64,000 bases of DNA, from contig NW_018407390.1 of assembly GCF_002113885.1 (NCBI RefSeq), forward strand, positions 2,971,208 to 3,035,207. The letters run 5' to 3'. This document shows, piece by piece, positions 507-16,840 of the stretch. The stretch's first letter is position 1. Each line of letters starts with the position of its first letter. This DNA comes from Mizuhopecten yessoensis (Eukaryota). Below the pieces are notes generated by a model. That model had not been told where the DNA came from and did no database searches. It saw nothing but the letters and a program-made list of their open reading frames with translations. A program made the translations under genes and the position numbers.

Positions 507-581
507 GAAGGCCTAGAAGTAGTAGACCTTTGATTAATTATTCAACAAATTATACTTGAATATTTGTCGTAACATCTTTAC

Positions 582-696
582 CTAGGATGAAGTTGTACTG
601 AGCCAGCTGACAATTGCGGACCTTCTTATTGAGCGTGGTACCCTCGTCAACATCAACATCACACATGAAGCCAGCATCATGGATTTGCTTCTTCAC
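582..696 (-). CDS. TARS1: TARS exon 19, [15 protein letters not shown]...[17 protein letters not shown]
   Basis: tttataag acceptor, G|gtaaag donor; anticodon-binding domain. Confidence 0.96.
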
Positions 697-3600
697 CTTA
701 TAAACAAGAGCAGAATATATATGAAGTGCTGAGAATTAATTCTCAAATTCAGATAACAGTTGTTTAGCATGCCATCAAATCCCTGGGGTAAGTGAATGTT
801 TAAGATGTTTTCTATTCTCTGGTGACGAACATATATTAAGTCATTTTTTGTTATCATGCGCTTAGGATATCTCAAAAACATTTCTGAGATTTCCCTCTGA
901 TCACAAATTATAACTATCTATAATAATCATAGTAACTGATATGGTTATGCAACTAATTTTCAATTATTGTCTACTTTGAAAACACTATGTATCAATGTCA
1001 AAGGTTTATGTCGGTATAATGCTGTAAATGAATGTTTGTCTGCGGCTTGACTAATATACCTTGCTTTGTCCTCTAAAATCCTCATACATGCCATATCTAA
1101 CGATTTGAGTGTGAGACTCACAAAAAATACACATCTGTCCCAAACTTTAATCAGTCCCACAAAATCAACCGATTTTGGTTCATCTAGCTACAGTATAACA
1201 TAAACCATAACACTATGGTAAGTGCAATATTATTTTCGTTTTTAATGTCATAAATTCCTCACTAATTCAGGGTAAAAATCTCAACTGATCTCACTACTTT
1301 GCACCAGAAAGTATTTGCCTGTGAATCCTGCTTTGATACAACCACATGCCTAAAGACAGTAATGACCTCTGTACAAGTCACTCTTTACGTCAAGTACCTA
1401 CCTCATTGGCGTAGTCATTGTACGTGGCTGCCACTGGAATCACAACAGCTTGGCGTGGAGACAGCCAGAAAGGCCTGGACAGCAATATAGAACAATGTTT
1501 AAAAAAATACCTGCATGTTCTTCTACTCGATTTGTCTCGGTGAGAAATATTATTTAGTTACGTCTTGATATAGCTATTGAGCAAGAATTTTCCAGACTGG
1601 ACAAATATTGTTCAACATTGATGCATAATTGGTATTTCTGGAAATGAAAATATGTGATCCCTAATTTAAAAAAAAAATCTTACATTGAAAGTTTCCTTTT
1701 TTCGTTACTAAGATATGTTTCACCATTTTTACTAATACTATGTAAATGACATTAGTTTCATTATTTGCCTACTGTGTTAACTTACCACTTGCCACTATAA
1801 TTCTCACACAAGATGGCGATCATCCTCTCCACAGAGCCAAGGACAGCTCTGTGGATTATCACTGGCCGCTTCTTTTCTGCAGCGTCCTCACCGCTGTGAT
1901 ATACACAAAATGATTTTCTTAGCTATTTTACATATGACAATCAGCATGTAGGCTAGTCCTATACTACAACAAACCTCGATATTCATGCATGAATTCAGTT
2001 ACATGTGTTCCTGCATAGGTTTCTTTAAGCAGATCAGCAAAACTTTATATTGAAAAATGGAAATTGTGTTTTTGGCAACTCACGTGACATAAGAAAGGTT
2101 GAAGCGGAGAGGTAGTTGAAAGTCCAGCTGTATCGTGGCAGTCTGGTGAGCACGCTTCAGTGCATCCATGATTGTAATATCAATCTAAAAAAAACACATT
2201 ACAGCTTTACCCAGATAACAAAAAACACAATTGTAAAGACCAGTCAGATAATCTGGGTCCAGAAAGCAGTCGAATTGGTAAGAAACAATGTATTATTCTA
2301 TCTCAAGATATAGAAATAATTTTTGAACATACCTTTGGTCCATAGAAGGCACCGTCCGCGGGATTCAGCACCCATCCTTCTCCGAATTCATTCAAACATT
2401 CCTCAAGTTGCTGATAACAAATTAAATGCATTTATTTAATTTTCATACTTAAAGTGTGAAAGCTTGTACACAAAATTTATACCTATTAAATGTTATTGTG
2501 AAATCAGATATATTGGGGGGGCCAATTTCGTGGTGTCCCGAAAGTTATCGGGGTACATGAATTCGTGGATCACCAAATACCCATTCAAACGGAGAATGCT
2601 GTTAGTCAAGCTTGTAATTACATCTTAATTTTATAGATTACCGATGATATCAGCAGAATTGAAGAAAAAAAAACCCAGGAAAATTAGTGATTTTACAGTA
2701 ATAACAAGACTTCTTGTTGGTGAGGAAGATCAATTTCTTGCTACAAACATTATTTATACATTGGTATGTAAGGGAATTCTACTATGAAGTGATTAATACA
2801 AATGGGATCCAAACACATTTTCAATTAACTTCTTTCTATTTTACTTTTAAACTTGAAATCTTAAATCTATGTGGATTCTTCCAATATTCACTGATCTATA
2901 TGTATACTTTTTGGGCTTGTTTAACCCAAATCATCAATCAAAATGTGATCTCTCAGGACATAGTCACATTTTATGAAATATATATTACTTATTGAGTGAA
3001 CAAGGTTTGTCAAATAAATTTACTTTTTACACAACTTTTATACACAGTATATTAGATAATTTTAAACACATAATTGTAGGTCGAAAGAAACATTCACCTT
3101 CTCTGCCTCATTCCAAATGGAAATATCTCCCAAAAATTTCTCAGGACGAGTGGACAGATTGAGTTTGAAGGTAAATCCAAACACACCATACGCATGCCTC
3201 AGGAAGTCGAGACAACCAGCAATCTCCTCCTTGATCTAAATACAAAAATAAAATATGGATGACTTTGGGGTGTGAAAATAGACAAGTGTCTGAAATAAAA
3301 CAAAAGGCCAAAAGGCCTGAATAGCTCTGACACATGCTTTTAGCCACAATTATATTGATTATGACACATGTGTATCAAATGAGGGAAATAAAAACAAACT
3401 AGAATCCAACAGAAACTTAGTAATGAATCTCTATAAATATCTAACCTTATTCGTATATTAGGTCTAAAAATATCCTCAGACTGTTGGACATTATTATCCT
3501 TATTTCTGTTGTTTCGCCCAGCCCTACTCAGTGCCTTTCTGCCTACTTAGTCCCCTTAAACCAAGGATGTTCTATACCAACTTATATCAAAAGGCTGTCT

Positions 3601-6600
3601 ATAAAATCATACTCTACTTTACCTATATGTGGCCCTGTCCTGCCCCTCGAAGGTCACAGCCTTCATTTATATCAAGTCCCAGCAATACTCCCTATCAAAC
3701 TTGGTCAAAATCTACTCCATTCCAACTAGTTAAAAAGTTGTCAAATTGGCAGAAGGATAATGCAAATAACCAACTTATGAGACCATAGTGTGTGAGATTC
3801 CTATCTCCCACATACACCATAAATCAATGAACTTATTCCTTTGTAAAGAGCAAACCGTTTAGAGGGTATATGGTTCAGACCGCCCAAATACAAAGTATAT
3901 AGAACCAAGTCTTGACAACAACAAAGTGCTGGAATCTGACCTGGTCTGGTCTACAGAATATGTGGGCGTCATCCTGCTGGAACCTTCGGACACGGGTCAA
4001 GCCGCTAAGTGCACCCTTGATCTCGTTTCTGTGTAATACACCAAAGTCGGCCATTCTCACTGGCAGCTCTTTCCAGGAACGTGGACGTACATCAAACATC
4101 AAACTGAAACAGACAAGTATAAATAAATTACTTAACCTATAGAGAACTTTTAAATGTTTGAATTACAAGGACATCCATTTCTTCTTTTAATTAATATCTT
4201 TAACTCAACCTGAATAAATATGAACCCTTTGATTAGAGCTCCTCGGAAATAAATGTGAAAGTATATACTGGTATAAACAGTAAACTGACAATAACTTGTT
4301 GTGTTTATTAATATTTAATCTATGTAGTTTAACTAGACAAAGGTAACATCACATAACTGATATTGTTTTGCAGCTGTTAACTTAAGACAGATGTAAATAC
4401 AAGTATTCATAAGTTGTCAATTGAAAATGAAGTTTTGAGTGTAATAACTTTCAAATCATTTAAGAATTGAGGAAATACTGTTATCACATTAACAAGAGGC
4501 CCAATGGGCTTGCATCATTCACCTTTTATTAATCTCACACTTGTGATCTTAAAAGTGAACTAAAATAAAGCTAAAAGCAAAATATCTAGAACCTGTTAAA
4601 TGATTTAAACACACACAACCCTGGGTCTTTGGTTATTTAAGGGAACTTGTTCAAAGGTTTTCAAGATAACTGACCCCTGTAACCATGAAAATGGGTGAAG
4701 GTCATTCATTTGAACATTTTGGTAGACGTTTCTCCCAACATTTTACTGGTCAATTATCATCACCCTGGAACTATTGGCTATTCAGAAGAAGTTGTTTAGA
4801 AATTCCACATCTTTGACCTCTGTGACCTAAAACTCATACTGTTTTGTATGAAAACCAAGAGTCACATCAAAGTGTGTGTCTGAAATATATGTCAGCATAT
4901 AAAAGGATCTAAACATATTGCTATGATATGTTCTTAAACCAGGTTGTTGTGCATTTTTCATAGGTCTCAAAGCGGTTCACAAATTATTATCCGTGGTTAT
5001 AGGGCCTTTGCAACCAGCCAATATTTTTCTCAACTTCCTGGGGAGCATACAACCGGAGCTGCCATTTCGGTGCTTACAGCTAGCATTCAACAATGTACTC
5101 ATTTACAGCTAAGTAGACTGGAACAAGCGGAGTAAAGTATCTTGCTCAAAGATACAACACAGTGCCGTGCCATGACTCGAACCAGCAATCCTTCGATTAC
5201 GAGCCTGGCATCCTACCACTAGACTACCATGCCTCCAGATGGGTTGATATACAGAAGTCCAAAAAAGTTCTTGTGAGGACTGTGGAGTGTGCCATATGTA
5301 CACAAAGTTTATCACAGACCTTGTTCATGATATGTGTCACAGTCTGCTAGTTATGCTTGTTTATTGTTCAATGTCCTTGTAATAGCTAAGGTAATATATG
5401 TATGAAGATTGACTTGTCAGAAATGAAATGAGAATAAGTTAATGGCACCTATCACCTGATAGTGGCTGCCTGTAATTTCCATTGTAACACATAAATGAAC
5501 TATAAACATCATTCATAACTAATCAATTGTTATTTCACAAATTTCGTAAATCTGCTACTCTGAAGTCTTACCAGTGGCCAGGACAGTTCATGGGTTTGAG
5601 GGCAAACTTTTCCTTGTCAACGTCACACACGAACATGTTGTCCTGTTTAAAACAGCAAACACACAATGTCATAAAAGTATGGAAACCATGTGAGTCTGAC
5701 CAACTCTATACTGTGTTGGCCTGAACACTATACCGTGTTGGCCTGAACACTATACCGTGTTGGCCTGAACACTATACCATGTTGGCCTGTAGGTGTTTAG
5801 ATATAATGAATTCTGTAACTTAGCTACCAATCAAAACCTCTGGCATATGATAGATTTCATATTTAAACAGCAAAATTGCTTTACTTCAATTATAAAGTAT
5901 TTATGTTTATCAGAATATCCACATATAATAGTTCTAATACAAACAAATTAAAAAATGCTTCCATATTGAAATAGCCATCAAACTGTTCATGTTACTCAAG
6001 AAAAAGAACAGCCCCTGGGAAATACCATCACTCTTATAAAGTCATAAAAGTTAATATTTACACCACATTGTATTGCAGAGCTATGAATAAATTGCATCAA
6101 CGTATGATGTAAGTGTGACGGGAATGTAAATATTATGGTATATTTCTGCTATAAACATAACCATGTGAAAACGTAATTTCTACAAATAATGTGGATAACA
6201 CACTCTGTTGGACATGATATTTTTAACTTACATCATTATGTTGCCAGTCACCGGACTGTTGCCAGAGCTTGCTGTTGTAAATATTAAACCTACATCATAA
6301 TGTTGCCAGTGACCGGACTGTTGCCAGAGCTTGCTGTTGAAAATGTTGGGAGACACAACTTCTTGGAAACCTCTCTTTTTGTATTCACCCTGAAATTGGA
6401 GAAATCAAACGTTCCTGTTATCAGATTAAAATGTTGCTTTTTTTCAATTTCCAAGAAAACAGTAAGGGTTGTTTCGTTATTTATTGTTAAAACCAGATCC
6501 ACCTACCATTCCTTATATTAAATGCTTAAAATTTTATGGATGGTTTGGACCCTGAAAAAGTGCCCTCATTCCTAATGTACTGTTAATTCTGGAACACCCT

Positions 6601-9600
6601 TTAAATATGTACTACACATGTATTACAGCCTTACCCATATAGATACCTACTACACATGTATTACAGCCTCACTCTTATATATATCTACTACACATGTATA
6701 ACAGCCTCACCCTTATATATATCTACTACACATGTATTACAGACCCACCCATATAAATATCTACTACTCATGTATTACAGACTCACCCTTATAAATATCT
6801 ACTCACATGTATTACAGCCTCACCCTTATAAATATCTACTACACATGTATAACAGCCTCACCCTTATAAATATGTACTACACATGTATTACAGCCTCACC
6901 CTTATAAATATCTACTACACATGTATTACAGCCTCCCCCTTATAAATATCTACTACACATGTATAACAGACTCACCCTTATAAATATCTACTCACATGTA
7001 TTACGGCCTCACCCTTATAAATATCTACTACACATTTATAACAGCCTCAACCTTATAAATAACAACTACACATGTATTACAGCCTCACCCATATATATAT
7101 CTACTACACATGTATTACAGCCTCACCCATATATATATCTACTACACATGTATTACAGACTCGCCCATATAAATATCTACTACACATGTATAACAGCCTC
7201 CCCCTTATAAATATGTACTACACATGTATTACAGCCTCACCCATATATATATCTACTACACATGTATTACAGACTCACTCTTATAAATATCTACTACACA
7301 TGTATTACAGACTCGCCCATATAAATATCTACTACACATGTAAAACAGCCTCACCCTTATAAATATCTACTGCTCATGTATTACAGACTCACCCATATAA
7401 ATCCCTACTACACATGTATTACAGCCTCACTCTTATATATATCTACTACACATGTATAACAGCCTAACCCTTATAAATATGTACTACACATGTATAACAG
7501 CCTCACCCTTATAAATATGTACTACACATGTATTACAGCCTAACCCTTATAAATATCTATTACACATGTATTACAGCCTCACCCTTATAAATAACCCTTA
7601 TAAATATCTACCACACATGTGTAACAGCCTCACTCATATAAATATCTACTACACATGTATAACAGCCTAACCCTTATAAATATGTACTACACATGTATTA
7701 CAGCCTCACCCTTATAAATATCTGCTACACATGTATTACAGACTCACCCATATAAATCCCTACTACACATGTATTACAGCCTCACTCTTATATATATCTA
7801 CTACACATGTATAACAGCCTCCCCCTTATAAATATGTACTACACATGTATAACAGCCTCACCCATATAAATATCTACTACACCTTTATAACAGCCTCAAC
7901 CTTATAAATAACAACTACACATGTATTACATACTCACCCATATAAATACCTACTACACATGTATTACAGCATCACCCTTATAAATATCTACTACACATTT
8001 ATAAAAGCCTCAACCATATAAATATCTACTACACATGTATAACAGACTCACCCTTATAAATATCTACTACACATTTATAAAAGCCTCAACCATATAAATA
8101 TCTACTACACATGTATAACAGACTCACCCTTATGAAGTCTACAAGAGTGTTGTATATATGAGCTCCTTTGGGGAGGAAGAAACAGCTCCCAGGACTCCAC
8201 TCGTGGAAGAAAAACAATTCTTGTTCCTGAAAAACAGAACATAATACCATGATCATTTTGAAAAGAACTGATTTCATAATTTCCTTAAATAGTTCTTGTC
8301 ATATATGTCATAAATTTAATGGAAGCTACATGTAAGATGTAAGATTAAGCTAGATTCAAATTTTAAATTTCTGAATATAAAAGAAGAAAGAGATCAGCTA
8401 GATAAAGGGTGAAAAGTTAGAGACCATGGCATAAAATTCCCTTCCATGTAGCATTTTGTATGACCTACCCTCCCAAGTTTACGATGGTCCCGTTTTGCGG
8501 CCTCCTCCTGGATGTGTTTCCACTCCTTAAGCTGTTTGGGATCGGGGAAAGAAATACCATACACTCTCTGCAGATTCTCAGCATCAGCCTTACCTTCCCA
8601 GTATGTGGAGGAATTCTAGAAAACAAAGGCCATGTTAAAGGCATGACTTAAAAACTTTTTTCCAGCGTCAACAAAAATGTAACAAGTGTGTTGAAGCAAA
8701 GCTCACTAACCTGAAGAATATTAGAAAAAAAAAAAATTGTAAATGGTAATTAAATTGTAACCGTCATCAGAACAATGTACATAAAGTCAGCAATTAAACC
8801 ACACAAGAACAGTCACATCTGAACTGTGGGCGTTGTCCTTTACAAGAATTTTGTTGGTTTTAATTTCCTCTGCAAGAAAACTTATTCTTTTTTTGTCATA
8901 ATTTAGCTGATATGAGCAGCACTAGCACAGCTATAAGAACTGTTGTAAGACACCATCTTCATTTCTGGAATACACCTTACAAAACAGAAGTTTGCTATTA
9001 AAATGACATCGGCCAGGGCAAAATCTATCTTCTTGCTCAGACATTAGTGGTCATGTTTGATCCCGTTATTGTATATATGTATGTATATTGGTAATGTGGC
9101 ACTATCTATATCTAAAGACACTACACAGGTGTTGTATAATAACTAGTTACCTTGGTCACAGCCATAGCCTTGATTTTGCCCGTGTGTCGGACATGGGGAC
9201 CTCGACACAAGTCAATCAGGGGACCACACCTATCAACATAACACATCATTACTTTCTGTGTAAAACATGTAATCATAAAAAAATCAATTTATTAGTTTCT
9301 TTTCAAAGAAACCGTCGATATTTATATTTCTTCTTCTTTTTATAGTGTGCTATTTGTGCTGATTATCAACAATTTATTACTCCCAAATCTAGTTTATAGT
9401 TTAAAATGTAAGTGTCTCTCTATCCAGCAGTGTCTTCTACACTTACTTGTAGACAGTGGTGGTGGGAGTGGTCACTTTCTCGTTTAAGATCCTCTGCTTG
9501 AATTTGTTATACTGTAAAGACAAAACATAAATAGCATTACCATTTACATGAATTGAATTGACTCTCCGGGAGAAAACAGACATGCATAATTGTAATTCAA

Positions 9601-12600
9601 CTTAACCTTTATAATCTGAATGAGTCACTTCTATTATGATGGTAACATGTTTAAGTTACATATCAGGAAGACACAATGGTAAAACTATTGATGGTGATGT
9701 AAACAACGACAAGTATGAGAAAACTGATATGGATTCTGCCAAGTCGCACATTCTGGGAGGGAGAAATACATAATTTAATGTCTTCTGAAGTTCTTTCCTC
9801 TTGATGCCACATATTTCCCCTTCAATATCATGTAAAGTGACAATGAGTAGGACCTTCAATACAAGAACTCTGATAAACTAGTCATCAGTTGTATGCTGAT
9901 GCAGTGACATGACCACCACAGTGGTGTGTACCTCAAGGGACCTGTAATTAGTGGGGTGACCGACTGGCTAACAGGTCAACAGGTGTTCAGCAAAGAATCT
10001 GAGGAGAACACCGAAATAGTACAGTTACAATTGGTAGATTAAACTTAACTTAACTAAAACATCTATTTAATATTATAACTGTGAAGTAGTCCTGGGAAAA
10101 AATTCTACTTTGTTAACATGTTGTTGTTTCAAATTTCCTACAATGAAAATCAGTGGATGGAAATCTAGTATAAATCTATATAGCTACCAGATTGGCATCT
10201 CTGGAGGTTGGCAGCCCTGTTCCTATACTATAGTTCAGTTAAGTATCGGTCAAAGTGTACTTTAATATAGAGTCAAGCCGTTACCAGATTTCTCACATGA
10301 TTCTACATTCATTCATGAACTTACAGCAAACATCTTCAGAAGGTTTTCCTTGGTCATAACAAGGCGTTCAAAGGGCTGCTTCTCCTTCACGATGCTCTTC
10401 ACCATCCCATCCATCACAGGGTAGTCCTCACTGGACACCGTCCTGTAAATACAAAACACACAACTCACCACCAAATCTGCAAACTTTTTCACACACTTAA
10501 CCATTCATCCGAGATCTGGAATACGATAGATTTCAGGGTTTGTTGGTGTTTATGTCCTATCAACAGTCTTGGGTCATTTTAGGGCGTGTTATATTTTGAT
10601 GGTGGAGGAAAACCAGAGTACCTGGAGAAAAAGCACCGACATACAGGCAGTACCTGGCGACTATCCCAGGTAAGCATTGAACCTGTGACCTAGTGATCAA
10701 GATTAACAAGGGGTTAATGACTGTAGACGGTCAGAGGCCTTAACCACTCGGCCAACGCAGCCCTATGAGGTTTTAGATATTGACACATATATGCACTGAT
10801 CTGAGAATATTTACCAACGCCAAATGCAGACTAGGTTAAAATATGGTTTAGATGAGGCGTATTAATTACAGACCCACTGTAACTAAGGTCCACAAAAGTG
10901 TTGAATCACTCTTAATCAAAAGCCATTAATATTCCTATATACTTTCAAAAGGGACCCCAGATATACTCACAAATCCATTTCAAGCTATGCATAAATATGA
11001 CTTCATTTGTAAAATACCTGGTTTTCATTCATATCAAAGTTCTATATGACGTTTAACAGTTCTATACAAAGATTGGGGTGTGATTGGAAGCACATTTGTA
11101 AAATCTATAACAACCTGTTCTATTGTTAGAACAGCATCTGTAACCTATTTACAGACTCCGACCCAGTGGTGGGTACACTGTAAAGATAATACACCATGCC
11201 AATACACCTGATGACTTACTTGTCGCCTGACCACATGTCGTAATAGAAGCCTCCCTCTATAGGGGGACCATAACAAAGATGTCCCCCGTAAAGTCGCTCC
11301 ATTGCTTCTCCCAATATGTGAGCACTGGAGTGCCGGAAAACATATTCACCTTAAAAACAAGACATGTTTGTAAGAAAACAGACTTTATCACAATTTACAA
11401 ACATGTATATCATGTACTATTCATCGCAACAGAGAACTAGTAGATTTTGTGTCCGGTGAACATTTTTAATACTTACTGGAACATATATGTTTCGCTAGTA
11501 GAATTTATATAGTTATTCCTACAGGCTAGTACTTGAAATACATTTTTTTCAATTGAAGCAATTATGGTCTTATAACCCAGAATGCCAAATTAATCAGTTT
11601 GTTTTAAGCACAATTTGTTTAATAATATTTATTTGAAACATTAGACTTCACACAAGGTTGACCTGTGCATGCTTGTTGTAACAAGAGGCTGAAAAGGCCT
11701 GTATCGCTTACTTGTTTCTCTTGTAATCATGACTGAACTAGAAAAGTATCTACAATGCTTCTGCTAACTAGAGACCACACGAGTCATCTCAGGTTTCTTG
11801 TTTACCCAATTATAAACACTTTGTAAGGACTATAACAAAAACATTTGTATGAAGATTGGCTTGAAACTAATCTGGTTGAATAGTAACCTTGCTTAGCTCT
11901 TCTGTTAAAGGGGCTGGTCGGGGAAAAAATGTCATATTTGCTAAAATGGCTTACACATGTTTAAAATACCTTCTTATAAAATAAACAGATACAAATTTTG
12001 CTGAAATTCACTCCCAAAGAGAAAAAATTATAATTATATTAAAGAAATCCTAAATCGTCACCTAACAGTCTAAAACTCTCAATTGACTCAGATCAGTGAT
12101 GTAATTTTACCGCACGCGCGTCATCAACAAGGCCAAATGTAAACATCTCGGAGAAAGAAAAAGATGCACGCAAAAGTCATGACAGGCACGAGGTATCAAT
12201 ACCGTTATATTTAACAACATATAGGTAGGAATACTACACTTCCATCATACATGACCTTTGAAAACAATTATTTACGTATAGTATTGCTGTCTTGTCCGAC
12301 ATGGCACATGACGGCGTGCTATTGTTGTTATCTTCACTGCCTCACTTTCGAAACAACCTCGTGACATATATAAATAGATCTGCGCTAAATTTACGCGGGG
12401 CTTCCCCGATATTTCAGTGGTCAAAACTCAACATTGCAAGCACAACTCGGCCATCATATTGCCGTGGTATAACTTTTGGAAGGCCAGAGACCGCATTTAG
12501 ACCCATTTATTTTGTAATTTTTTCCCCAACCAGCCCCTTTAAGGGGTCAGAAGAACACGCTATTTACTGGATCTGGTACAGAAGACTACTATAAATAATT

Positions 12601-15600
12601 TCCTCCAGCCCCACAGTTTAATCGTGTTATTACATGTAGCTATTTAGTCACCTTCTGGGTCATCAAACTTGAGGAGCTGTAGTGTGGCATCACACTCGAA
12701 TGGCCTGTCGAGGTCCCATTGCACATCATTCACCTTGGCAACCACACAGCTGTCGGCCAAGCCTTGACTACAACACAAAATGTCAATCATTATTGAATCT
12801 AAAAATAGATGTGGCATAGACAGCCTGTCCAAAGGTACCCTTGGATATCGAAGTATGATAGAATTCCATCACACTAATACAATGTACTGGGACATTTCTG
12901 GGTCAAGGACTTTTTCAGTCAAGAAAGCCTTGGTCATGACATAGTTTCTGAAGGTCTTCCCGCAATATAACGGTCAACGATTAATATTATTTAAAAATAA
13001 ACATATGGGCTTGACAACACGATAATCATTTTCTGACAACTTTGAAATATGTAGGTCTGACTTTTTACCATACTTTTAGCTAGATCCGCTAGTCATAATT
13101 TTGGGTCCCAGATCTCAAACTTAAAGATTTTTTTTTATCTTGTCTGATCTCTTCTCATACTACCGATAATATTCTCCACAATTTGAAATTATTGATGACT
13201 ATTTGCTACAAAGAAATTATTGCTTTTCCTAAATAGTGCAAAACTGTTTTGAGAGAAAACAATTTGTCAAATCAACAACATTCCAACCTCTGATTTAGAT
13301 AATCTGTTATGTACTGTCATTCTAATTAAGATCGATGAGGCATATCTACCTCTGTTGATCAGGTCAAAGGTGTGCATGTTTATCACTGCAACTGAGGAAG
13401 TGGAGATTGAAAAAGTTGGATCATTAAAATGTTTGAATATGCTTCACATACTCTCTAAGCATTGAATTGATACAGATCTATGCAAACAATGTGCAGTACT
13501 GATTCCAATATCATAAATGACCTCAGCTGTTGCTAGGAAACTTTGAAATAGGTTAAGCAGAGATTGTATCATTGTGTCCAGTACTGTTCTGTATTATTGT
13601 CCACGTGTCAATTGTTAACAAATAAATTGTGAAAAAATGACACTCGATTATAAACTTATATGACAATGCAAAAAATTGATGGCAGATCTAGAGCAACACA
13701 TACCTGATGCCCTTTGCGACCTCATATGGTGTGGTCTGCCAAGACTGACCATCCACCACTTTTCCATCAGGCAATGTTATCTTGATGGGTGCAGAAGGCA
13801 TTGCAGCTAATTGTTCATCAGCCTCCTTCTTTAACTGGTCCCACAGAATCTGCCGCTCGGCCAGGAACTCTGGAGGGGGCATCATCTAAGGGGGAAATTA
13901 GCAAGGCATTATGTATGGCAAAAAACAAACAGGAATTGAGAGTAACAACCGACAGAAATCGTCTTTGGGTAACAACAAACAATTTATTTAGGGGCCCTAA
14001 CAATAGGCAAAAACCGTCCTAAGTTAACAACAACAGTCAGGAATCGTCTTAGTATTGGTAACAACATACTGGAATCATCTATTATCTCTCTTAACAAAAG
14101 AGAACATGTACACACACTGTCACAGGAATTAATTTAGTGATTTAAACGGACAGGAAACATCTCGTGACTAAAACAACTCATTTACAGAATGGCCCACTTT
14201 AAATTTACAATTATATGTAATTATACACAATGATACAAACGTTTAAGATATAAAATCAGTGCTTTAAATAGTGGGAGACCTTGGGCCAAATATGCTTGTA
14301 TATTTAATATGAGGTGCCATGCTCTTTGCATTGCAGGCATTCACATTCTCCAAATGCAGGACCCTAAATTGCATTAATATATGCCACTTCACAATGTTTT
14401 AATCAAAATTCTGCAAATAAATCATGAGTTCAGACTATTATTTATTTATTTTGAACGGGATGCTTGTGTAATGACCCTTGATGACTTAATCAACTAGCAA
14501 GAATATTATGCAATACAAAGTCAGATGTGTACCACTTCGAAGAAGTCCTTACAGTTTTGCTTTGAACTCTGTGTACAATGAAAAGCATGATTGATGATAG
14601 TCCTATATTTATTGGTCAATGGAATACCAGGTACTATTCAGTATATATATCTTGTTGGAAAATGAAATGAAATGAAAAGAAATCTGCATGCTGGTTTTAC
14701 CACTTCTCAATGTATGTGCTACACCAATAAATTACCTGTAGTATAAATATAGATACCTATTCCATGCACATGGCTGTACACATAAAGTGTAGCTAAAGTG
14801 AAAGTACCCTGGTACATGTACCAAACAAGTAATAAACAAGTGCTGACAAAGCTTTTCCCTAAAGGTTGTATCTAAGCAATCTATTTATTTTGTCAGCAGT
14901 ACTTCAATCAGTTTGTTAAAAAAATCTAGATTAAAATTGAAAACTTAATGTTTAGTTTCAATTTTTTTTCTTTCAGAAATTGGAACCTTAAACATTTTTT
15001 TTATATTTAACATTTTATGACAGCTTATGCACTTAGGTAACATAATAATTAATTAAAAAAAAACCTGTTCATTTTTCTCCCCATGCAATACCTTTTTTAT
15101 AAGGCAAAAAATAGTTGTTTTCTGGTAACCCTGCTACCTATCCTAATTTTTTGTGTATATAGTCAATACCCTAAATGTTTTGGCAATTTTCAAGGAATCA
15201 CTGTTGAAGTAAAGTTTACTCTCCAATATAAACTTCATAAAAATAAGTTTAATTTTAATACCTAGCTATACCTACCCTCAGTGATTTGTTTAGTGGTGAA
15301 TTCAGAGCCTAGTTATAAAGTGTAGCAACTCTTATTGAATATTTTTGGTATTGTCCTTCATTTAATAATTATTACTGAAAAATTCAAATACTTGTTAGTG
15401 ACTAATTGAAGTGACACACATTAATGCATATACATATATATATCAACTCTGGTATTAAACAAACCTCTTTTAACTTGTCTCCAGATCCAGTTTCAGCAGC
15501 AGCCTTTTTACCCTTTTTTCCTCCCTAGTAAAAAAAGCAACAGATTAGTTGTAAACCCTCATCCTGAAAGGACTAAAAGCTAACACTTATAAGATCAGTA

Positions 15601-16537
15601 AAACTAATTAGCACTAACATTTAAATCTAACAAAATGTAATCATAACATACAAATGTATATAGCTACAATGTACTGACGAGTGATTAGGGTGCCACATTA
15701 TTAAAAATTCACATAAGTGAATTAGGATTTACAACAAAATAAGATCAATATCTACCTCATCCTCCTCATCAGAGCTACCGGAGCGAAAATGCTCCATTTT
15801 TAAACAACTATTGCTAGAAAGCAGCGTTCACTTGCACATTTAAGTATAATTCCGGCCAAAGTCACATGCACGCTAACGGTTTTATATACACAGTATATAA
15901 TAGAATGAACTGTTCCTATAATAGTCCTTATAATTATAATTCATATATTTAAAACCACGGCAAGAATGAGCTGTCCTTAATAATAATATAAACTTTACTA
16001 AGAATCTATGAGCTGACTCCAAAAACAGATTTCATGGAATTCGCGCTGTTCTTTAAATCACGATGATATTGGATCTCTAGTTTTCGGTTTAAATAGGCCT
16101 ACGATACACTGTGTGCATTCGTGTAACGTGTAGATGATGCAATAGACAGCTGATAGAAAGTAGGTCTAAAATTAGTCCGGTAAATTGACATATATTCAGC
16201 CAAGGTATATCTCTAGACTCTCCAAGTCAAACAAATTCCACATTTAACTCAGGTAAGTTATAACAAGAGAGTCAATGTAATGTTAAATAAACATGAATCA
16301 TATTATAATTTTTGTTTACACTACTATATATGTTACTATATCACTCAAGCGATAACCACAAACCGTGGATGCATATCTGGAGAAAGTATGGCATATCCTC
16401 TTGGAAAGACGTGTTATAATAAACTTGGAAAACATGATGGCTGTAAGGATCGAGTACTAAAACTATTGTATCCGTGCCTTTTCGGATTTTTCAGATATGT
16501 CCATCTTTTTGAGCTGTTTTTCCACGTTTTCTGCCAT
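582..16537 (-). CDS. TARS1: Threonyl-tRNA synthetase (class II aaRS, cytosolic-type), spliced gene of 19 coding exons in window, 3'-partial (last exon(s) beyond position 1)
   Basis: Exons join in frame (1,999 nt). They give the TGS domain (IKITLPDG...WDLDRP), editing motifs HSSAH and [23 protein letters not shown], motif 2 HRNE...[37 protein letters not shown] and the start of the anticodon-binding domain. All introns are GT-AG except intron 1 (GC-AG). Confidence 0.97.
1402..1474 (-). CDS. TARS1: TARS exon 18, [24 protein letters not shown]
   Basis: gtccag acceptor, gtaggt donor. Confidence 0.97.
1786..1893 (-). CDS. TARS1: TARS exon 17, [35 protein letters not shown]
   Basis: cacag acceptor, gtaagt donor; motif 3. 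Confidence 0.97.
2084..2184 (-). CDS. TARS1: TARS exon 16, [33 protein letters not shown]
   Basis: tttttag acceptor, gtgagt donor. Confidence 0.97.
2333..2410 (-). CDS. TARS1: TARS exon 15, [26 protein letters not shown]
   Basis: ttatcag acceptor, gtatgt donor. Confidence 0.97.
2494..2700. mobile_element. Degenerate Tc1/mariner-type MITE
   Basis: TATTGTGAAATCA...TGATTTTACAGTA inverted ends bounded by TA, with internal ATTTCGTGG/ATTCGTGG motifs. Confidence 0.55.
3098..3235 (-). CDS. TARS1: TARS exon 14, [12 protein letters not shown]...[20 protein letters not shown]
   Basis: tttag acceptor, gtgaat donor. Confidence 0.97.
3941..4103 (-). CDS. TARS1: TARS exon 13, [14 protein letters not shown]...[18 protein letters not shown]
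   Basis: gtttcag acceptor, CAG|gtcaga donor; motif 2. Confidence 0.97.
4946..5236 (-). mobile_element. tRNA-derived CORE-type SINE with tRNA-Thr(CGT)-like head and L2-like 3' tail
   Basis: A-box-like TAGTCTAGTGG, B-box GGTTCGAGTC, loop CTCGTAA, CORE-like TTGAGCAAGATACTTTAC...GCTGTAAATGAGTAC, tail GTGAACCGCTTTGAG. Confidence 0.75.
5572..5642 (-). CDS. TARS1: TARS exon 12, [23 protein letters not shown]
   Basis: aaacag acceptor, gtaaga donor; Zn-ligand Cys. Confidence 0.97.
5714..5789. repeat. 22-bp tandem repeat (TGTTGGCCTGAACACTATACCG), ~3.5 copies
   Basis: Directly visible. Confidence 0.9.
6226..6281 (-). repeat. Tandem duplicate (62-bp offset) of the 3' half of TARS exon 11 including its splice donor
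   Basis: CAACAGCAAGCTCTGGCAACAGTCCGGTgACTGGCAACATaATGAT|GTAAGT versus exon ...GGTCACTGGCAACATTATGAT|GTAGGT. Confidence 0.92.
6294..6389 (-). CDS. TARS1: TARS exon 11, [32 protein letters not shown]
   Basis: aatttcag acceptor, gtaggt donor; motif 1 region. Confidence 0.96.
6596..8133. repeat. 38-bp minisatellite, ~40 copies, derived from the TARS exon 10/intron 10 junction
   Basis: Unit CACCCTTATAAATATCTACTACACATGTATTACAGCCT; the terminal copy overlaps the last nucleotides of exon 10. Confidence 0.95.
8128..8226 (-). CDS. TARS1: TARS exon 10, [33 protein letters not shown]
   Basis: tttttcag acceptor, AGG|gtgagt donor. Confidence 0.97.
8469..8615 (-). CDS. TARS1: TARS exon 9, NSSTYWEG...[10 protein letters not shown]...RDHRKLGR
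   Basis: ttttctag acceptor, gtaggt donor. Confidence 0.97.
9151..9229 (-). CDS. TARS1: TARS exon 8, [26 protein letters not shown]
   Basis: gatag acceptor, gtaact donor; editing motif DLCRGPH. Confidence 0.97.
9447..9511 (-). CDS. TARS1: TARS exon 7, [21 protein letters not shown]
   Basis: ctttacag acceptor, gtaagt donor. Confidence 0.96.
10325..10442 (-). CDS. TARS1: TARS exon 6, TVSSEDY...[21 protein letters not shown]
   Basis: tttacag acceptor, gtaagt donor. Confidence 0.96.
10536..10763 (-). mobile_element. tRNA-derived V-domain-type SINE
   Basis: A-box TGGCCGAGTGG, B-box-like GGTTCAATGC, V-like TTTCTCCAGGTACTCTGGTTTTCCTCCACC, tail CTGTTGATAGGACATAAAC...AAACC. Confidence 0.7.
11220..11349 (-). 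CDS. TARS1: TARS exon 5, [38 protein letters not shown]
   Basis: tttttaag acceptor, gtaagt donor; editing-domain HxxxH. Confidence 0.96.
11909..12538. mobile_element. Kolobok-type non-autonomous DNA transposon (630 bp)
   Basis: TTAA|AGGGGCTGGTCGGGGAAAAAAT...ATTTTTTCCCCAACCAGCCCCT|TTAA: ~22-bp TIR, TTAA TSD, RR termini. Confidence 0.8.
12652..12767 (-). CDS. TARS1: TARS exon 4, [15 protein letters not shown]...KFDDPE
   Basis: tgttgtag acceptor, G|gtgact donor; TGS domain. Confidence 0.96.
13704..13885 (-). CDS. TARS1: TARS exon 3, [11 protein letters not shown]...[10 protein letters not shown]
   Basis: ccccttag acceptor, AG|gtatgt donor; start of TGS domain. Confidence 0.96.
15465..15524 (-). 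CDS. TARS1: TARS exon 2, [20 protein letters not shown]
   Basis: tttttttactag acceptor, GAG|gtttgt donor, phase 0/0; resembles the Lys-rich N-extension of animal ThrRS. Confidence 0.88.
15756..15797 (-). CDS. TARS1: TARS putative alternative first exon 1b, [14 protein letters not shown]
   Basis: aaaATGG start, 14 codons, GC-richer than flanks, phase-0 donor GAG|GTAGAT, 231-nt intron to exon 2. Confidence 0.5.
16135..16143 (+). promoter_or_regulatory. C/EBP-ATF composite (CARE/AARE, ATF4) element TGATGCAAT in TARS intron 1
   Basis: Exact match to the canonical amino-acid-response element; aaRS genes are established ATF4 targets. Confidence 0.5.
16364..16435 (-). CDS. TARS1: TARS alternative exon 1m, [24 protein letters not shown], putative mitochondrial targeting presequence
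   Basis: gccatcATG start; 24 codons with five K/R, no D/E, Ser/Thr-rich, RYAS processing-like motif. Phase-0 donor ACG|GTTTGT has the same GTTTGT as the exon 2 donor. Confidence 0.75.
16478..16537 (-). CDS. TARS1: TARS exon 1a, [20 protein letters not shown] (cytosolic-type N-terminus), ends at non-canonical donor AAG|GCACGG
   Basis: ATG in good context (agcATGG). The frame hits TAG at 16465-16463 unless spliced. The GC donor is phase 0, matching exon 2. Confidence 0.75.
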
Positions 16538-16539
16538 GC

Positions 16540-16840
16540 TGTTCTGTCTTCACGCATGAACGGAAGTAGAAACAGTAAACTAATAAACAAAGTCGAAACA
16601 TTCCGGATGAAATGGCCTACTTACTACATACTTGCCAATTTTTTGAAATTTCCATGGGGGAGATTATGCGTGCTCAAAATTAAAAGCATCAATAACATGT
16701 GTTTATGTACACCATAGGGAAAAAATGACACTTATAAATGGCATCGTTTGGACTGTTCCATCAAATCTTAGAAAGTAAGAACAGTTTAACAAATTCACTG
16801 GATAAAAATGCTCACTTTTGGGGTCCGAAATCGGAAGTCT
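16540..16840 (-). promoter_or_regulatory. Putative TATA-less housekeeping promoter of TARS
   Basis: ETS cores CGGAAGT (16561-16567, ~16832) and CCGGATG (~16603), plus AAATGGC YY1-like motifs directly upstream of the exon 1a ATG. Confidence 0.5.

What the first reader, a model, noticed from the sequence alone, without database searches (positions are those of the whole stretch)
16364..16537. Weak GC donor may switch one ThrRS gene between cytosolic and mitochondrial products
Seen: exon 1a (ATG 16537) can continue only via the non-canonical donor AAG|GCACGG. If that donor is skipped, the frame stops at TAG 16465-16463. A second ATG (16435) 27 nt later opens [24 protein letters not shown] (five K/R, no acidic residues, RYAS motif), ending at a phase-0 GT donor compatible with exon 2 or exon 3. 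Established: these are hallmarks of mitochondrial presequences, and some invertebrates such as Drosophila use one dual-targeted ThrRS gene. Inference: competing 5' splice sites (weak GC versus downstream GT) turn the cytosolic start into a 24-codon uORF and let the mitochondrial isoform be made by reinitiation or leaky scanning. An alternative TSS between the two ATGs is the other possibility. This exon is below the ORF-track size cut-off and easy for gene models to miss.
Basis: partly seen in the sequence, partly recalled or inferred. Interest (0 to 1): 0.85.

Follow-up and report, generated by a model that had tools for sequence, protein, structure and literature searches.

The report
Scallop ThrRS gene, two destinations
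The single threonyl-tRNA synthetase gene of the Yesso scallop makes a cytosolic or a mitochondrial enzyme according to which of two splice donors in its first exon is used; both forms are already in public annotation, but the unusual GC donor is conserved from molluscs to annelids.

Summary
The window is Mizuhopecten yessoensis. Exon 1a (16537-16478) joined to exon 2 through the GC donor is RefSeq isoform X2. The presequence exon 1b (16435-16364) joined to exon 2 is isoform X1, which is also the original GenBank model OWF46960.1. So gene models did not miss the exon.

The 988 Mb assembly holds only one ThrRS gene. A second match is a 99% identical redundant contig.

Nine other sequences share the layout: five genomic contigs and four transcript contigs, from bivalve-like taxa and siboglinid annelids. 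Each has the cytosolic start exon ending in AAAAAG|GCATGA. The spacer that follows is not conserved. Then comes a homologous presequence ORF (consensus MLSxxxLxRLxKRIGxxYxR) ending in a phase-0 GT donor.

Transcript contigs of the mitochondrial isoform from four RNA-seq runs run through the unspliced GC donor out of exon 1a. That fits competing 5' splice sites with the cytosolic ORF left as an upstream ORF. How that mRNA is translated, and where it starts in the scallop, is untested.

Single-gene dual-localised ThrRS is known in Drosophila and C. elegans. The conserved GC-donor layout appears undescribed. Interest is moderate.

The parts
16478..16537 (-). Exon 1a coding part: the cytosolic start, [20 protein letters not shown], with a strong start context (A at -3, G at +4)
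   Evidence: Identical to residues 1-20 of XP_021360533.1, isoform X2. Homologous starts occur in L015, L018, L019, L020 and L021.
16472..16477 (-). GC 5' splice site GCACGG (AAG|GCACGG). It is the donor of the GC-AG intron 16477-15525 used for the cytosolic isoform.
   Evidence: The X2 junction SEK|GGKK fits only this donor and the acceptor at 15525. The orthologous position reads AAAAG|GCATGA in 9 other sequences.
16436..16477 (-). Spacer that remains in the mRNA when the GC donor is skipped. It holds in-frame stops TAG 16465-16463 and TAG 16459-16457, so ORF 1a becomes a 24-codon upstream ORF.
   Evidence: The spacer sequence is not conserved beyond the first 6 nt.
16364..16435 (-). Exon 1b coding part: mitochondrial presequence [24 protein letters not shown]
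   Evidence: Identical to residues 1-24 of XP_021360532.1 / OWF46960.1, isoform X1. It has 5 K/R, no D/E, 7 S/T and hydrophobic moment 0.77. It aligns with 20 orthologous N-termini.
16358..16363 (-). GT donor of exon 1b (ACG|GTTTGT), phase 0. It has the same hexamer as the donor of exon 2.
   Evidence: The X1 junction is AST|GGKK.
15756..15797 (-). Exon 1c: a third alternative first coding exon, [14 protein letters not shown], with donor GAG|GTAGAT
   Evidence: It is the N-terminus of XP_021360534.1, isoform X3. Pecten maximus X3 has a counterpart.
15465..15524 (-). Exon 2, shared by all three isoforms: [20 protein letters not shown], with a strong polypyrimidine acceptor
13704..13885 (-). Exon 3: MMPPPEF..., the start of the TGS domain
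550..13703 (-). Remaining ThrRS exons: TGS, tRNA_SAD, class II core and anticodon-binding domain. The 3' end probably lies beyond the start of the window.

Best explanation
The window carries the only threonyl-tRNA synthetase gene of Mizuhopecten yessoensis.

Its first exon holds two start codons, one behind the other:
- The upstream one (16537) opens the conserved cytosolic N-terminus. It reaches the shared exon 2 only through a GC donor at 16477.
- If that donor is skipped, the cytosolic frame stops after four more codons. Splicing then uses the GT donor at 16363, which joins a 24-residue mitochondrial presequence (ATG 16435) to the same exon 2.

So the choice between two 5' splice sites, 114 nt apart, decides whether the mRNA encodes cytosolic ThrRS (isoform X2) or mitochondrial ThrRS (isoform X1). 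A third first exon (15797-15756) gives isoform X3.

Shown here:
- the sequence features;
- both annotated isoforms;
- the single gene;
- conservation of the GC donor and of the presequence exon in molluscs and annelids;
- read-through of the GC donor in mitochondrial-isoform transcripts of other species.

Inferred:
- The scallop X1 mRNA starts upstream of ATG 16537, so the cytosolic ORF acts as a 24-codon upstream ORF.
- ATG 16435 is reached mainly by reinitiation. The context of ATG 16537 is strong, which argues against leaky scanning.
- The relative strength of the two donors sets the ratio of the isoforms.
- The presequence directs import.
For: - Identity of the locus: X2, X1 and X3 of M. 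yessoensis begin with exactly exon 1a, 1b or 1c followed by exon 2 and exon 3.
- Conserved GC donor: AAAAG|GCATGA follows the homologous cytosolic exon in five genomic contigs, including Lamellibrachia satsuma, and in four transcript contigs. The sequence after +6 is not conserved. The L. satsuma GenBank model KAI0229291.1 also splices at this GC.
- Presequence exon: a basic, amphipathic ORF with a phase-0 GT donor lies 30-64 nt after the GC donor in every one of these sequences. Twenty-one N-termini from bivalves, gastropods, cephalopods, a siboglinid and a nemertean align to the consensus MLSxxxLxRLxKRIGxxYxRxxS. The composition is rare among random ORFs of the window.
- Transcripts: L022, L024, L025 and L027 run from exon 1a, through the unspliced GC donor and the spacer, into ATG 1b, and then into exon 2. 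Three of them start 30 nt before the point of divergence. That is the k-1 overlap of Logan's 31-mer graphs (PMC12424806), so the assembly graph branches at the GC donor.
- Single gene: the thrS profile and exon queries hit only this locus, a 99.1% identical redundant contig, and one isolated weak fragment.
- Precedents: Drosophila ThrRS is listed as cytosolic plus mitochondrial (PMC4826098). C. elegans tars-1 makes both forms (PMC10196762).
Against: - I could read no RNA data from the scallop itself. The 5' end of the X1 mRNA is unknown, so a start site inside exon 1a or in the spacer is not excluded for this species.
- The transcript contigs of other species end at the graph branch. They therefore do not show ATG 1a and ATG 1b on one molecule, and reads from unspliced pre-mRNA could contribute to the read-through path.
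- No presequence predictor was on hand, and there are no import data.
- The assembly is fragmented (82,659 contigs), so failing to find a second ThrRS gene is not proof that none exists.
- A GC donor upstream of a GT donor should favour the mitochondrial form, yet the cell needs far more cytosolic enzyme. Donor strength alone may therefore not set the ratio.
Confidence: 0.72

Rival explanations
1. Alternative promoters rather than splice-site competition. The mitochondrial mRNA starts at its own transcription start inside exon 1a or in the spacer. It then carries no upstream cytosolic ORF, and the GC donor is simply the constitutive donor of the cytosolic transcript.
For: No TSS data exist here. 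The transcript contigs stop 29-30 nt upstream of the GC donor, so a start further inside exon 1a cannot be ruled out. Exon 1c shows that the gene has further alternative 5' ends.
Against: Three independent RNA-seq assemblies place at least 29-30 nt of exon 1a directly in front of the spacer and ATG 1b, and a fourth, cut off by an adapter, 7 nt. Three of the four end exactly at a graph branch, as expected if exon 1a is shared by both paths. A start in the 30-64 nt spacer would leave a very short leader.
Confidence: 0.2
2. The invariant GCAYG at the donor is conserved mainly as a binding site for a Fox-1/Rbfox splicing factor. In most taxa it also supplies the TGA stop of the upstream ORF. On this reading it is not conserved merely as a weak donor, and the isoform choice is regulated by tissue or state.
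For: Nine sequences read GCAUGA and the scallop reads GCACGG, so the part common to all ten is GCAYG. GCAUG and GCACG are both functional FOX-1 motifs in C. elegans (PMC7787662). The T at +4 and the A at +6 are not splice-consensus bases, yet they are invariant in the nine.
Against: A single pentamer can be conserved for other reasons. A at +3 and G at +5 are ordinary donor consensus, and TGA is a stop codon. A factor sitting on the donor itself would compete with U1. There are no binding data, and I did not look for an Rbfox gene in this genome.
Confidence: 0.15
3. Isoform X1 is a minor, non-functional or decay-targeted transcript, and mitochondrial ThrRS comes from an unassembled second gene.
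For: The assembly is fragmented. An mRNA with an upstream ORF can be a target of nonsense-mediated decay.
Against: Exon 1b is homologous and kept open, with a phase-0 donor, across at least three phyla. No second ThrRS locus was found with the thrS profile or with exon queries.
Confidence: 0.04

Closest known systems
C. elegans tars-1, a single gene giving cytosolic and mitochondrial ThrRS (PMC10196762)
   Same: One ThrRS gene supplies both compartments. The two forms differ only by an N-terminal presequence. Translation control involving two start codons is invoked.
   Different: In the worm a single mRNA carries the presequence ATG upstream of, and in frame with, the cytosolic ATG, and no splicing choice is involved. 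Here the order is reversed, stop codons separate the two ORFs, and two 5' splice sites produce two mRNAs. The presequences are not homologous.
Drosophila ThrRS (CG5353), listed as dual-localised (PMC4826098)
   Same: A single gene gives two polypeptides, one of which is predicted to be mitochondrial. Arthropod RefSeq isoform pairs (Eurytemora, Anthonomus) look like the scallop pair: an MA.NV-type or a basic N-terminus on a shared lysine-rich exon.
   Different: Localisation in the fly rests on prediction only. I did not examine the fly gene structure or its donor type, so whether it shares the GC donor is unknown.
Human KARS1 (alternative splicing) and GARS1 (alternative initiation), as summarised in PMC10196762
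   Same: Dual-localised aminoacyl-tRNA synthetases made from one gene by changing the N-terminus.
   Different: They are different enzymes. No GC donor or upstream-ORF layout is reported for them in the text I read.
GC-AG introns as regulators of alternative splicing (PMC2490688, PMC3167603, PMC7242645)
   Same: A GC 5' splice site, about 1% of introns and enriched at alternatively spliced donors, competes with a nearby GT site.
   Different: Those are genome-wide surveys and a human disease case. Here one GC donor is fixed at an orthologous position in molluscs and annelids and decides the subcellular destination of the enzyme.

Membership tests
Dual-localised aminoacyl-tRNA synthetase encoded by one nuclear gene | Only one gene for this synthetase in the nuclear genome | tested here: met
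   The thrS profile TIGR00418 and three exon queries against the 988 Mb assembly hit only this locus, contig C81642 (99.1% identical over 2071 nt, so redundant) and one isolated weak fragment on C5531. Caveat: the assembly is fragmented.
Dual-localised aminoacyl-tRNA synthetase encoded by one nuclear gene | Two products that differ only at the N-terminus | tested here: met
   X2 (715 aa) and X1 (719 aa) differ only in exon 1a versus exon 1b. Both continue with exon 2 and exon 3.
Dual-localised aminoacyl-tRNA synthetase encoded by one nuclear gene | One N-terminus has the properties of a mitochondrial presequence | tested here: met
   It has 5 K/R, no D/E, 7 S/T and hydrophobic moment 0.77, against 5 acidic residues in exon 1a. 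Its composition occurs in 1.8% of background ORFs, and composition plus moment in 0.5%. A basic residue followed by x-x-S sits near the end in most of the 21 orthologues. No dedicated predictor was available.
Dual-localised aminoacyl-tRNA synthetase encoded by one nuclear gene | The longer or alternative form is imported into mitochondria and charges mitochondrial tRNA-Thr | not testable with these tools
   Needs a GFP fusion, cell fractionation or a charging assay.
U2-type GC-AG intron | GC at +1/+2 and AG at the 3' end, with the exon junction confirmed by a product | tested here: met
   AAG|GCACGG ... TACTAG|GGA. The X2 protein reads SEK|GGKK across the junction.
U2-type GC-AG intron | The donor is conserved at the orthologous position | tested here: met
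   AAAAG|GC is identical in all 10 sequences, and GCATGA in 9 of them.
Upstream-ORF or reinitiation control of a downstream start codon | The upstream ORF and the main ORF lie on the same mRNA | tested here: inconclusive
   Transcript contigs of other species carry 7-30 nt of exon 1a, the unspliced donor and ATG 1b. They end at the assembly-graph branch before ATG 1a. No scallop transcript was available.
C. elegans tars-1 type (two in-frame ATGs on one ORF) | The presequence ATG lies upstream of the cytosolic ATG in one uninterrupted frame | tested here: not met
   The cytosolic ATG is the upstream one, and TAG 16465-16463 interrupts the frame.
Fox-1/Rbfox-regulated splice site | A GCAUG or GCACG motif next to the regulated splice site | tested here: met
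   GCAUG is present in 9 sequences and GCACG in the scallop, both at +1 to +5 of the donor. This is the presence of a motif only.
Fox-1/Rbfox-regulated splice site | The factor binds, and the splicing choice depends on it | not testable with these tools
   Needs CLIP or a knock-down.

The most novel reading that the evidence does not exclude
The six bases after exon 1a form a multi-purpose switch kept since the common ancestor of molluscs and annelids. They read GCAUGA in nine taxa and GCACGG in the scallop.

They would combine three roles:
- a deliberately poor GC donor;
- a Fox-1/Rbfox-type GCAYG motif;
- in most taxa, the stop codon that ends the cytosolic ORF at once when the donor is skipped.

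Together with reinitiation after the resulting short upstream ORF, this would let the cell tune mitochondrial against cytosolic ThrRS by tissue or by stress.
Probability: 0.2. Interest if true: 0.65.

Novelty: new member of a known kind. Interest (0 to 1): 0.4.

Why it matters
Most invertebrates lack a separate mitochondrial ThrRS gene. How one gene serves two compartments has been shown by experiment only in C. elegans, which uses a different mechanism.

The scallop locus and its relatives show a second solution, probably widespread in protostomes: two 5' splice sites in the first exon. A non-canonical GC donor is fixed at the same position in at least two phyla.

That gives a compact, easily mutated element for testing:
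- how GC donors set isoform ratios;
- how upstream ORFs gate a mitochondrial isoform.

It also warns annotators that proteins named 'threonine--tRNA ligase, cytoplasmic-like isoform X1' in molluscs are very likely the mitochondrial enzyme.

Tried and rejected
- tblastn of the 20-24 residue exon peptides against L012 and L013 gave only noise.
- In L012 and in L016/L017 no exon 1a homologue lies within the 10 kb upstream that could be fetched. These loci say nothing either way.
- The in-phase canonical donor AAC|GTGGAA at 16525 was considered and rejected. The codons after it are conserved as protein (for example MDIS with synonymous changes in L020), and they are present in X2.
- Joining exon 1a to the AG at 16442 would give an intron of about 36 nt. 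This was rejected as too short.
- An alignment of the window's exon translations, each given by reference, to P0096 (A1) was misaligned and was not used for any search.
- Contig C81642 looked like a second ThrRS copy but is 99.1% identical including introns. The C5531 hit is a lone 28-residue match with no other ThrRS exon nearby.
Full-length comparisons used database proteins (P0282, P0291, P0292).
- No structure prediction or complex prediction was run, because neither bears on the question.
- The search of earlier findings returned nothing relevant.
Full report
**1. The observation**

On the minus strand, ATG 16537 opens [20 protein letters not shown]. This is 60 nt, ends at 16478, and is followed by AAG|GCACGG. 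Read through, the frame stops at TAG 16465-16463 and again at TAG 16459-16457.

ATG 16435 is in the same frame. It opens [24 protein letters not shown], 72 nt, ending at 16364 before ACG|GTTTGT, a phase-0 donor.

Exon 2 (15524-15465, [20 protein letters not shown]) is phase 0 at both ends and has a strong pyrimidine tract. Exon 3 starts at 13885.

One detail is not. An in-phase canonical donor, AAC|GTGGAA, sits at 16525. It is not the donor used, as section 3 shows.

**2. What the locus is**

A search with exon 3 against protein representatives returned mostly short N-terminal fragments. A full-length search started from one named hit, P0152. It returned more than one hundred metazoan ThrRS proteins, many of them named.

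P0282 is XP_021360533.1, 'threonine--tRNA ligase, cytoplasmic-like isoform X2 [Mizuhopecten yessoensis]'. It begins with exactly exon 1a, then exon 2, then exon 3 of the window. Its cluster also holds two other isoforms:
- X1 (XP_021360532.1, which is also OWF46960.1, 719 aa) begins [24 protein letters not shown] followed by GGKKGKK. That is exon 1b joined to exon 2.
- X3 (XP_021360534.1) begins [14 protein letters not shown] followed by GGKKGKK.

I located the X3 exon at 15797-15756, with donor GAG|GTAGAT. Residues 1-24 of X1 map at 100% identity to 16435-16364.

So the window is Yesso scallop, and the presequence exon is already in both the original GenBank annotation and RefSeq.

I did not build or search a joined spliced model. 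Exons were searched one at a time by reference, and full-length comparisons used database proteins.

**3. The GC donor**

The X2 junction SEK|GGKK can be made only by the intron 16477-15525, which is GC...AG.

I fetched genomic contigs that carry close relatives of exon 3. Four unnamed ENA contigs score best against bivalve ThrRS (L015, L018, L019, L020). A fifth contig is from the annelid Lamellibrachia satsuma (L021).

In these five loci a homologue of exon 1a (MEANVEKQMNNMEISSKKK, MADSVSEGVEKMDINEEKK, MAENVAEKLEDMSLGDGQK, MAENVEKKVAKMDISDKKK, MADNVAEKMNDLGISDAKK) ends in AAAAG|GCATGA. The L. satsuma GenBank model KAI0229291.1 splices at this GC.

With four transcript contigs added, ten sequences can be lined up on the donor:
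- The five exon bases AAAAG and GC are identical in all ten.
- GCATGA is identical in the nine that are not the scallop.
- Nothing beyond +6 is conserved.

The exon 1a codons downstream of the AAC|GT site are conserved as protein and show synonymous differences. This rules out the early GT donor.

**4. The presequence exon**

In each of the nine sequences an ATG lies 30-64 nt after the GC donor. It opens a basic, amphipathic ORF of 23-34 codons that ends in a phase-0 GT donor: G|GTGTGT, G|GTTCGT or G|GTGCGT.

Named RefSeq isoforms show the same pairs of N-termini on a shared lysine-rich exon. Examples are Pecten, Mytilus, Crassostrea, Ruditapes, Mercenaria, Dreissena, Patella, Haliotis, Pomacea, Littorina, Biomphalaria, Physella, Argonauta and a nemertean. 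Copepods and a weevil show them too.

Twenty-one such N-termini align to the consensus MLSxxxLxRLxKRIGxxYxRxxS. The exon is therefore homologous, not merely similar in composition.

Properties of the scallop peptide:
- 5 K/R, no D/E, 7 S/T, hydrophobic moment 0.77;
- exon 1a, by contrast, has 5 acidic residues;
- among 628 ATG-ORFs of at least 24 codons in the window, 1.8% match the composition and 0.5% also match the moment.

From established knowledge of presequences, the R-x-x-S ending fits the R-2/R-3 cleavage motifs of the mitochondrial processing peptidase. I had no dedicated predictor.

**5. Transcripts**

Four Logan RNA-seq contigs encode full-length mitochondrial-type isoforms: L022 (a siboglinid), L024 (Mytilus), L025 (mytilid-like) and L027 (a bivalve). 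Each reads from the 3' end of exon 1a, through the unspliced AAAAAG|GCATGA and the spacer, into ATG 1b, and then straight into exon 2.

Three of them begin 30 nt before the base at which the GC-spliced path would diverge. In L024 this is 29 nt plus a shared G.

Logan contigs come from 31-mer graphs in which every 31-mer is unique and k-mers seen only once are discarded (PMC12424806). A start k-1 bases before a divergence therefore marks a branch in the graph. Reads leave exon 1a both ways, spliced at GC and reading through.

This is what competing 5' splice sites predict. It does not prove that ATG 1a is on the same molecule, because the contigs stop at the branch. Pre-mRNA reads could also contribute.

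**6. One gene**

- The thrS profile found exon matches only on the window's contig and on C81642.
- C81642 is 99.1% identical to window 8093-10163, introns included, so it is a redundant contig.
- Exon queries added one 28-residue match on C5531, with no other ThrRS exon within several kb on either side.

The assembly has 82,659 contigs, so absence of a second gene is strong but not final.

**7. Mechanism**

Shown:
- two mRNA types defined by the choice of donor;
- a single gene;
- deep conservation of both the donor and the presequence exon.

Inferred:
- The mitochondrial mRNA carries the cytosolic ORF as an upstream ORF of 21-24 codons.
- ATG 1a has A at -3 and G at +4 in all six genomic sequences, so leaky scanning should be poor.
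- Reinitiation across a gap of 24-58 nt is the likelier route.
- The TGA that directly follows the donor in nine sequences would end the upstream ORF at once.

A start site of its own for X1 remains possible.

The part common to all ten donors is GCAYG, and both versions are functional FOX-1 motifs in C. elegans (PMC7787662). This is a lead, not a result.

**8. What is known**

- Drosophila ThrRS is listed as dual-localised on the basis of prediction (PMC4826098).
- C. elegans tars-1 makes both enzymes from one mRNA with the presequence ATG upstream. Its authors call this the first experimental case for ThrRS (PMC10196762).
- GC donors are about 1% of donors and are enriched at alternative sites (PMC2490688, PMC3167603, PMC7242645).
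- I found no paper on mollusc or annelid ThrRS isoforms or on this GC donor.

**9. Verdict**

The scallop gene is a new, unpublished but already annotated member of the known class of single-gene dual-localised synthetases.

The element worth following is the GC donor and upstream-ORF layout, fixed across two phyla. Interest is moderate.

Noticed in passing
window 15756-15797 (minus strand): A third alternative first coding exon, [14 protein letters not shown], acidic and serine-rich, with donor GAG|GTAGAT. It is the N-terminus of isoform X3, and Pecten maximus X3 has a counterpart. An acceptor-like TTTCTAG lies 21 nt upstream of its ATG, followed by CAA TAG. It could therefore be a cassette exon rather than a true first exon.
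   Followed up: partly
window 16552-16560 (minus strand); L015 1655-1665: A CATGCG(T/C) motif lies 15-30 nt upstream of the cytosolic ATG in the scallop and in L015, and TGCGCA repeats lie upstream in L018. These resemble half-sites of NRF-1/Erect wing. The ATG inside the motif (16557) is out of frame and would overlap both starts, so the transcription start probably lies downstream of it.
   Followed up: no
G000 contig C81642:1906-3976 (L004): A short contig 99.1% identical to window 8093-10163, introns included. It is a redundant or haplotype copy of part of the ThrRS gene in the assembly.
   Followed up: yes
window 6596-8133: A tandem array of tyrosine- and isoleucine-rich ORFs repeats inside a ThrRS intron.
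   Followed up: no
L021 6001-8190 and 11519-14190 (Lamellibrachia satsuma JAHXPS010002908.1): The GenBank annotation splits one ThrRS gene into two models. KAI0229291.1 (135 aa) is the N-terminal exons reading on into an intron. KAI0229292.1 (638 aa) is the rest.
   Followed up: partly
proteins P0015, P0217, P0234, P0285: Some copepod and other arthropod ThrRS isoforms carry a long extra N-terminal domain of about 100 residues ahead of the lysine-rich exon. It resembles the GST-C/eEF1B-gamma-like appendices of other synthetases. This is a third kind of N-terminus on the same gene.
   Followed up: no
L013/L014 10001-12150 (ENA ERZ26858995): In an intron-poor eukaryote the ThrRS ORF starts with a presequence (MLLRFVRASSAAQRVGFRFKSS...), followed in frame by a second Met (MAEAASYPLE). 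This is the opposite order from the scallop and resembles the C. elegans and fungal layouts.
   Followed up: no
L015, L018-L021, L024, L025, L027: +3 to +5 of the GC donor: GCATGA creates an out-of-frame ATG right at the donor. In most of these sequences it opens a tiny ORF of 3-8 codons in the spacer (for example MKN* in L025). The scallop has lost this ATG (GCACGG).
   Followed up: no
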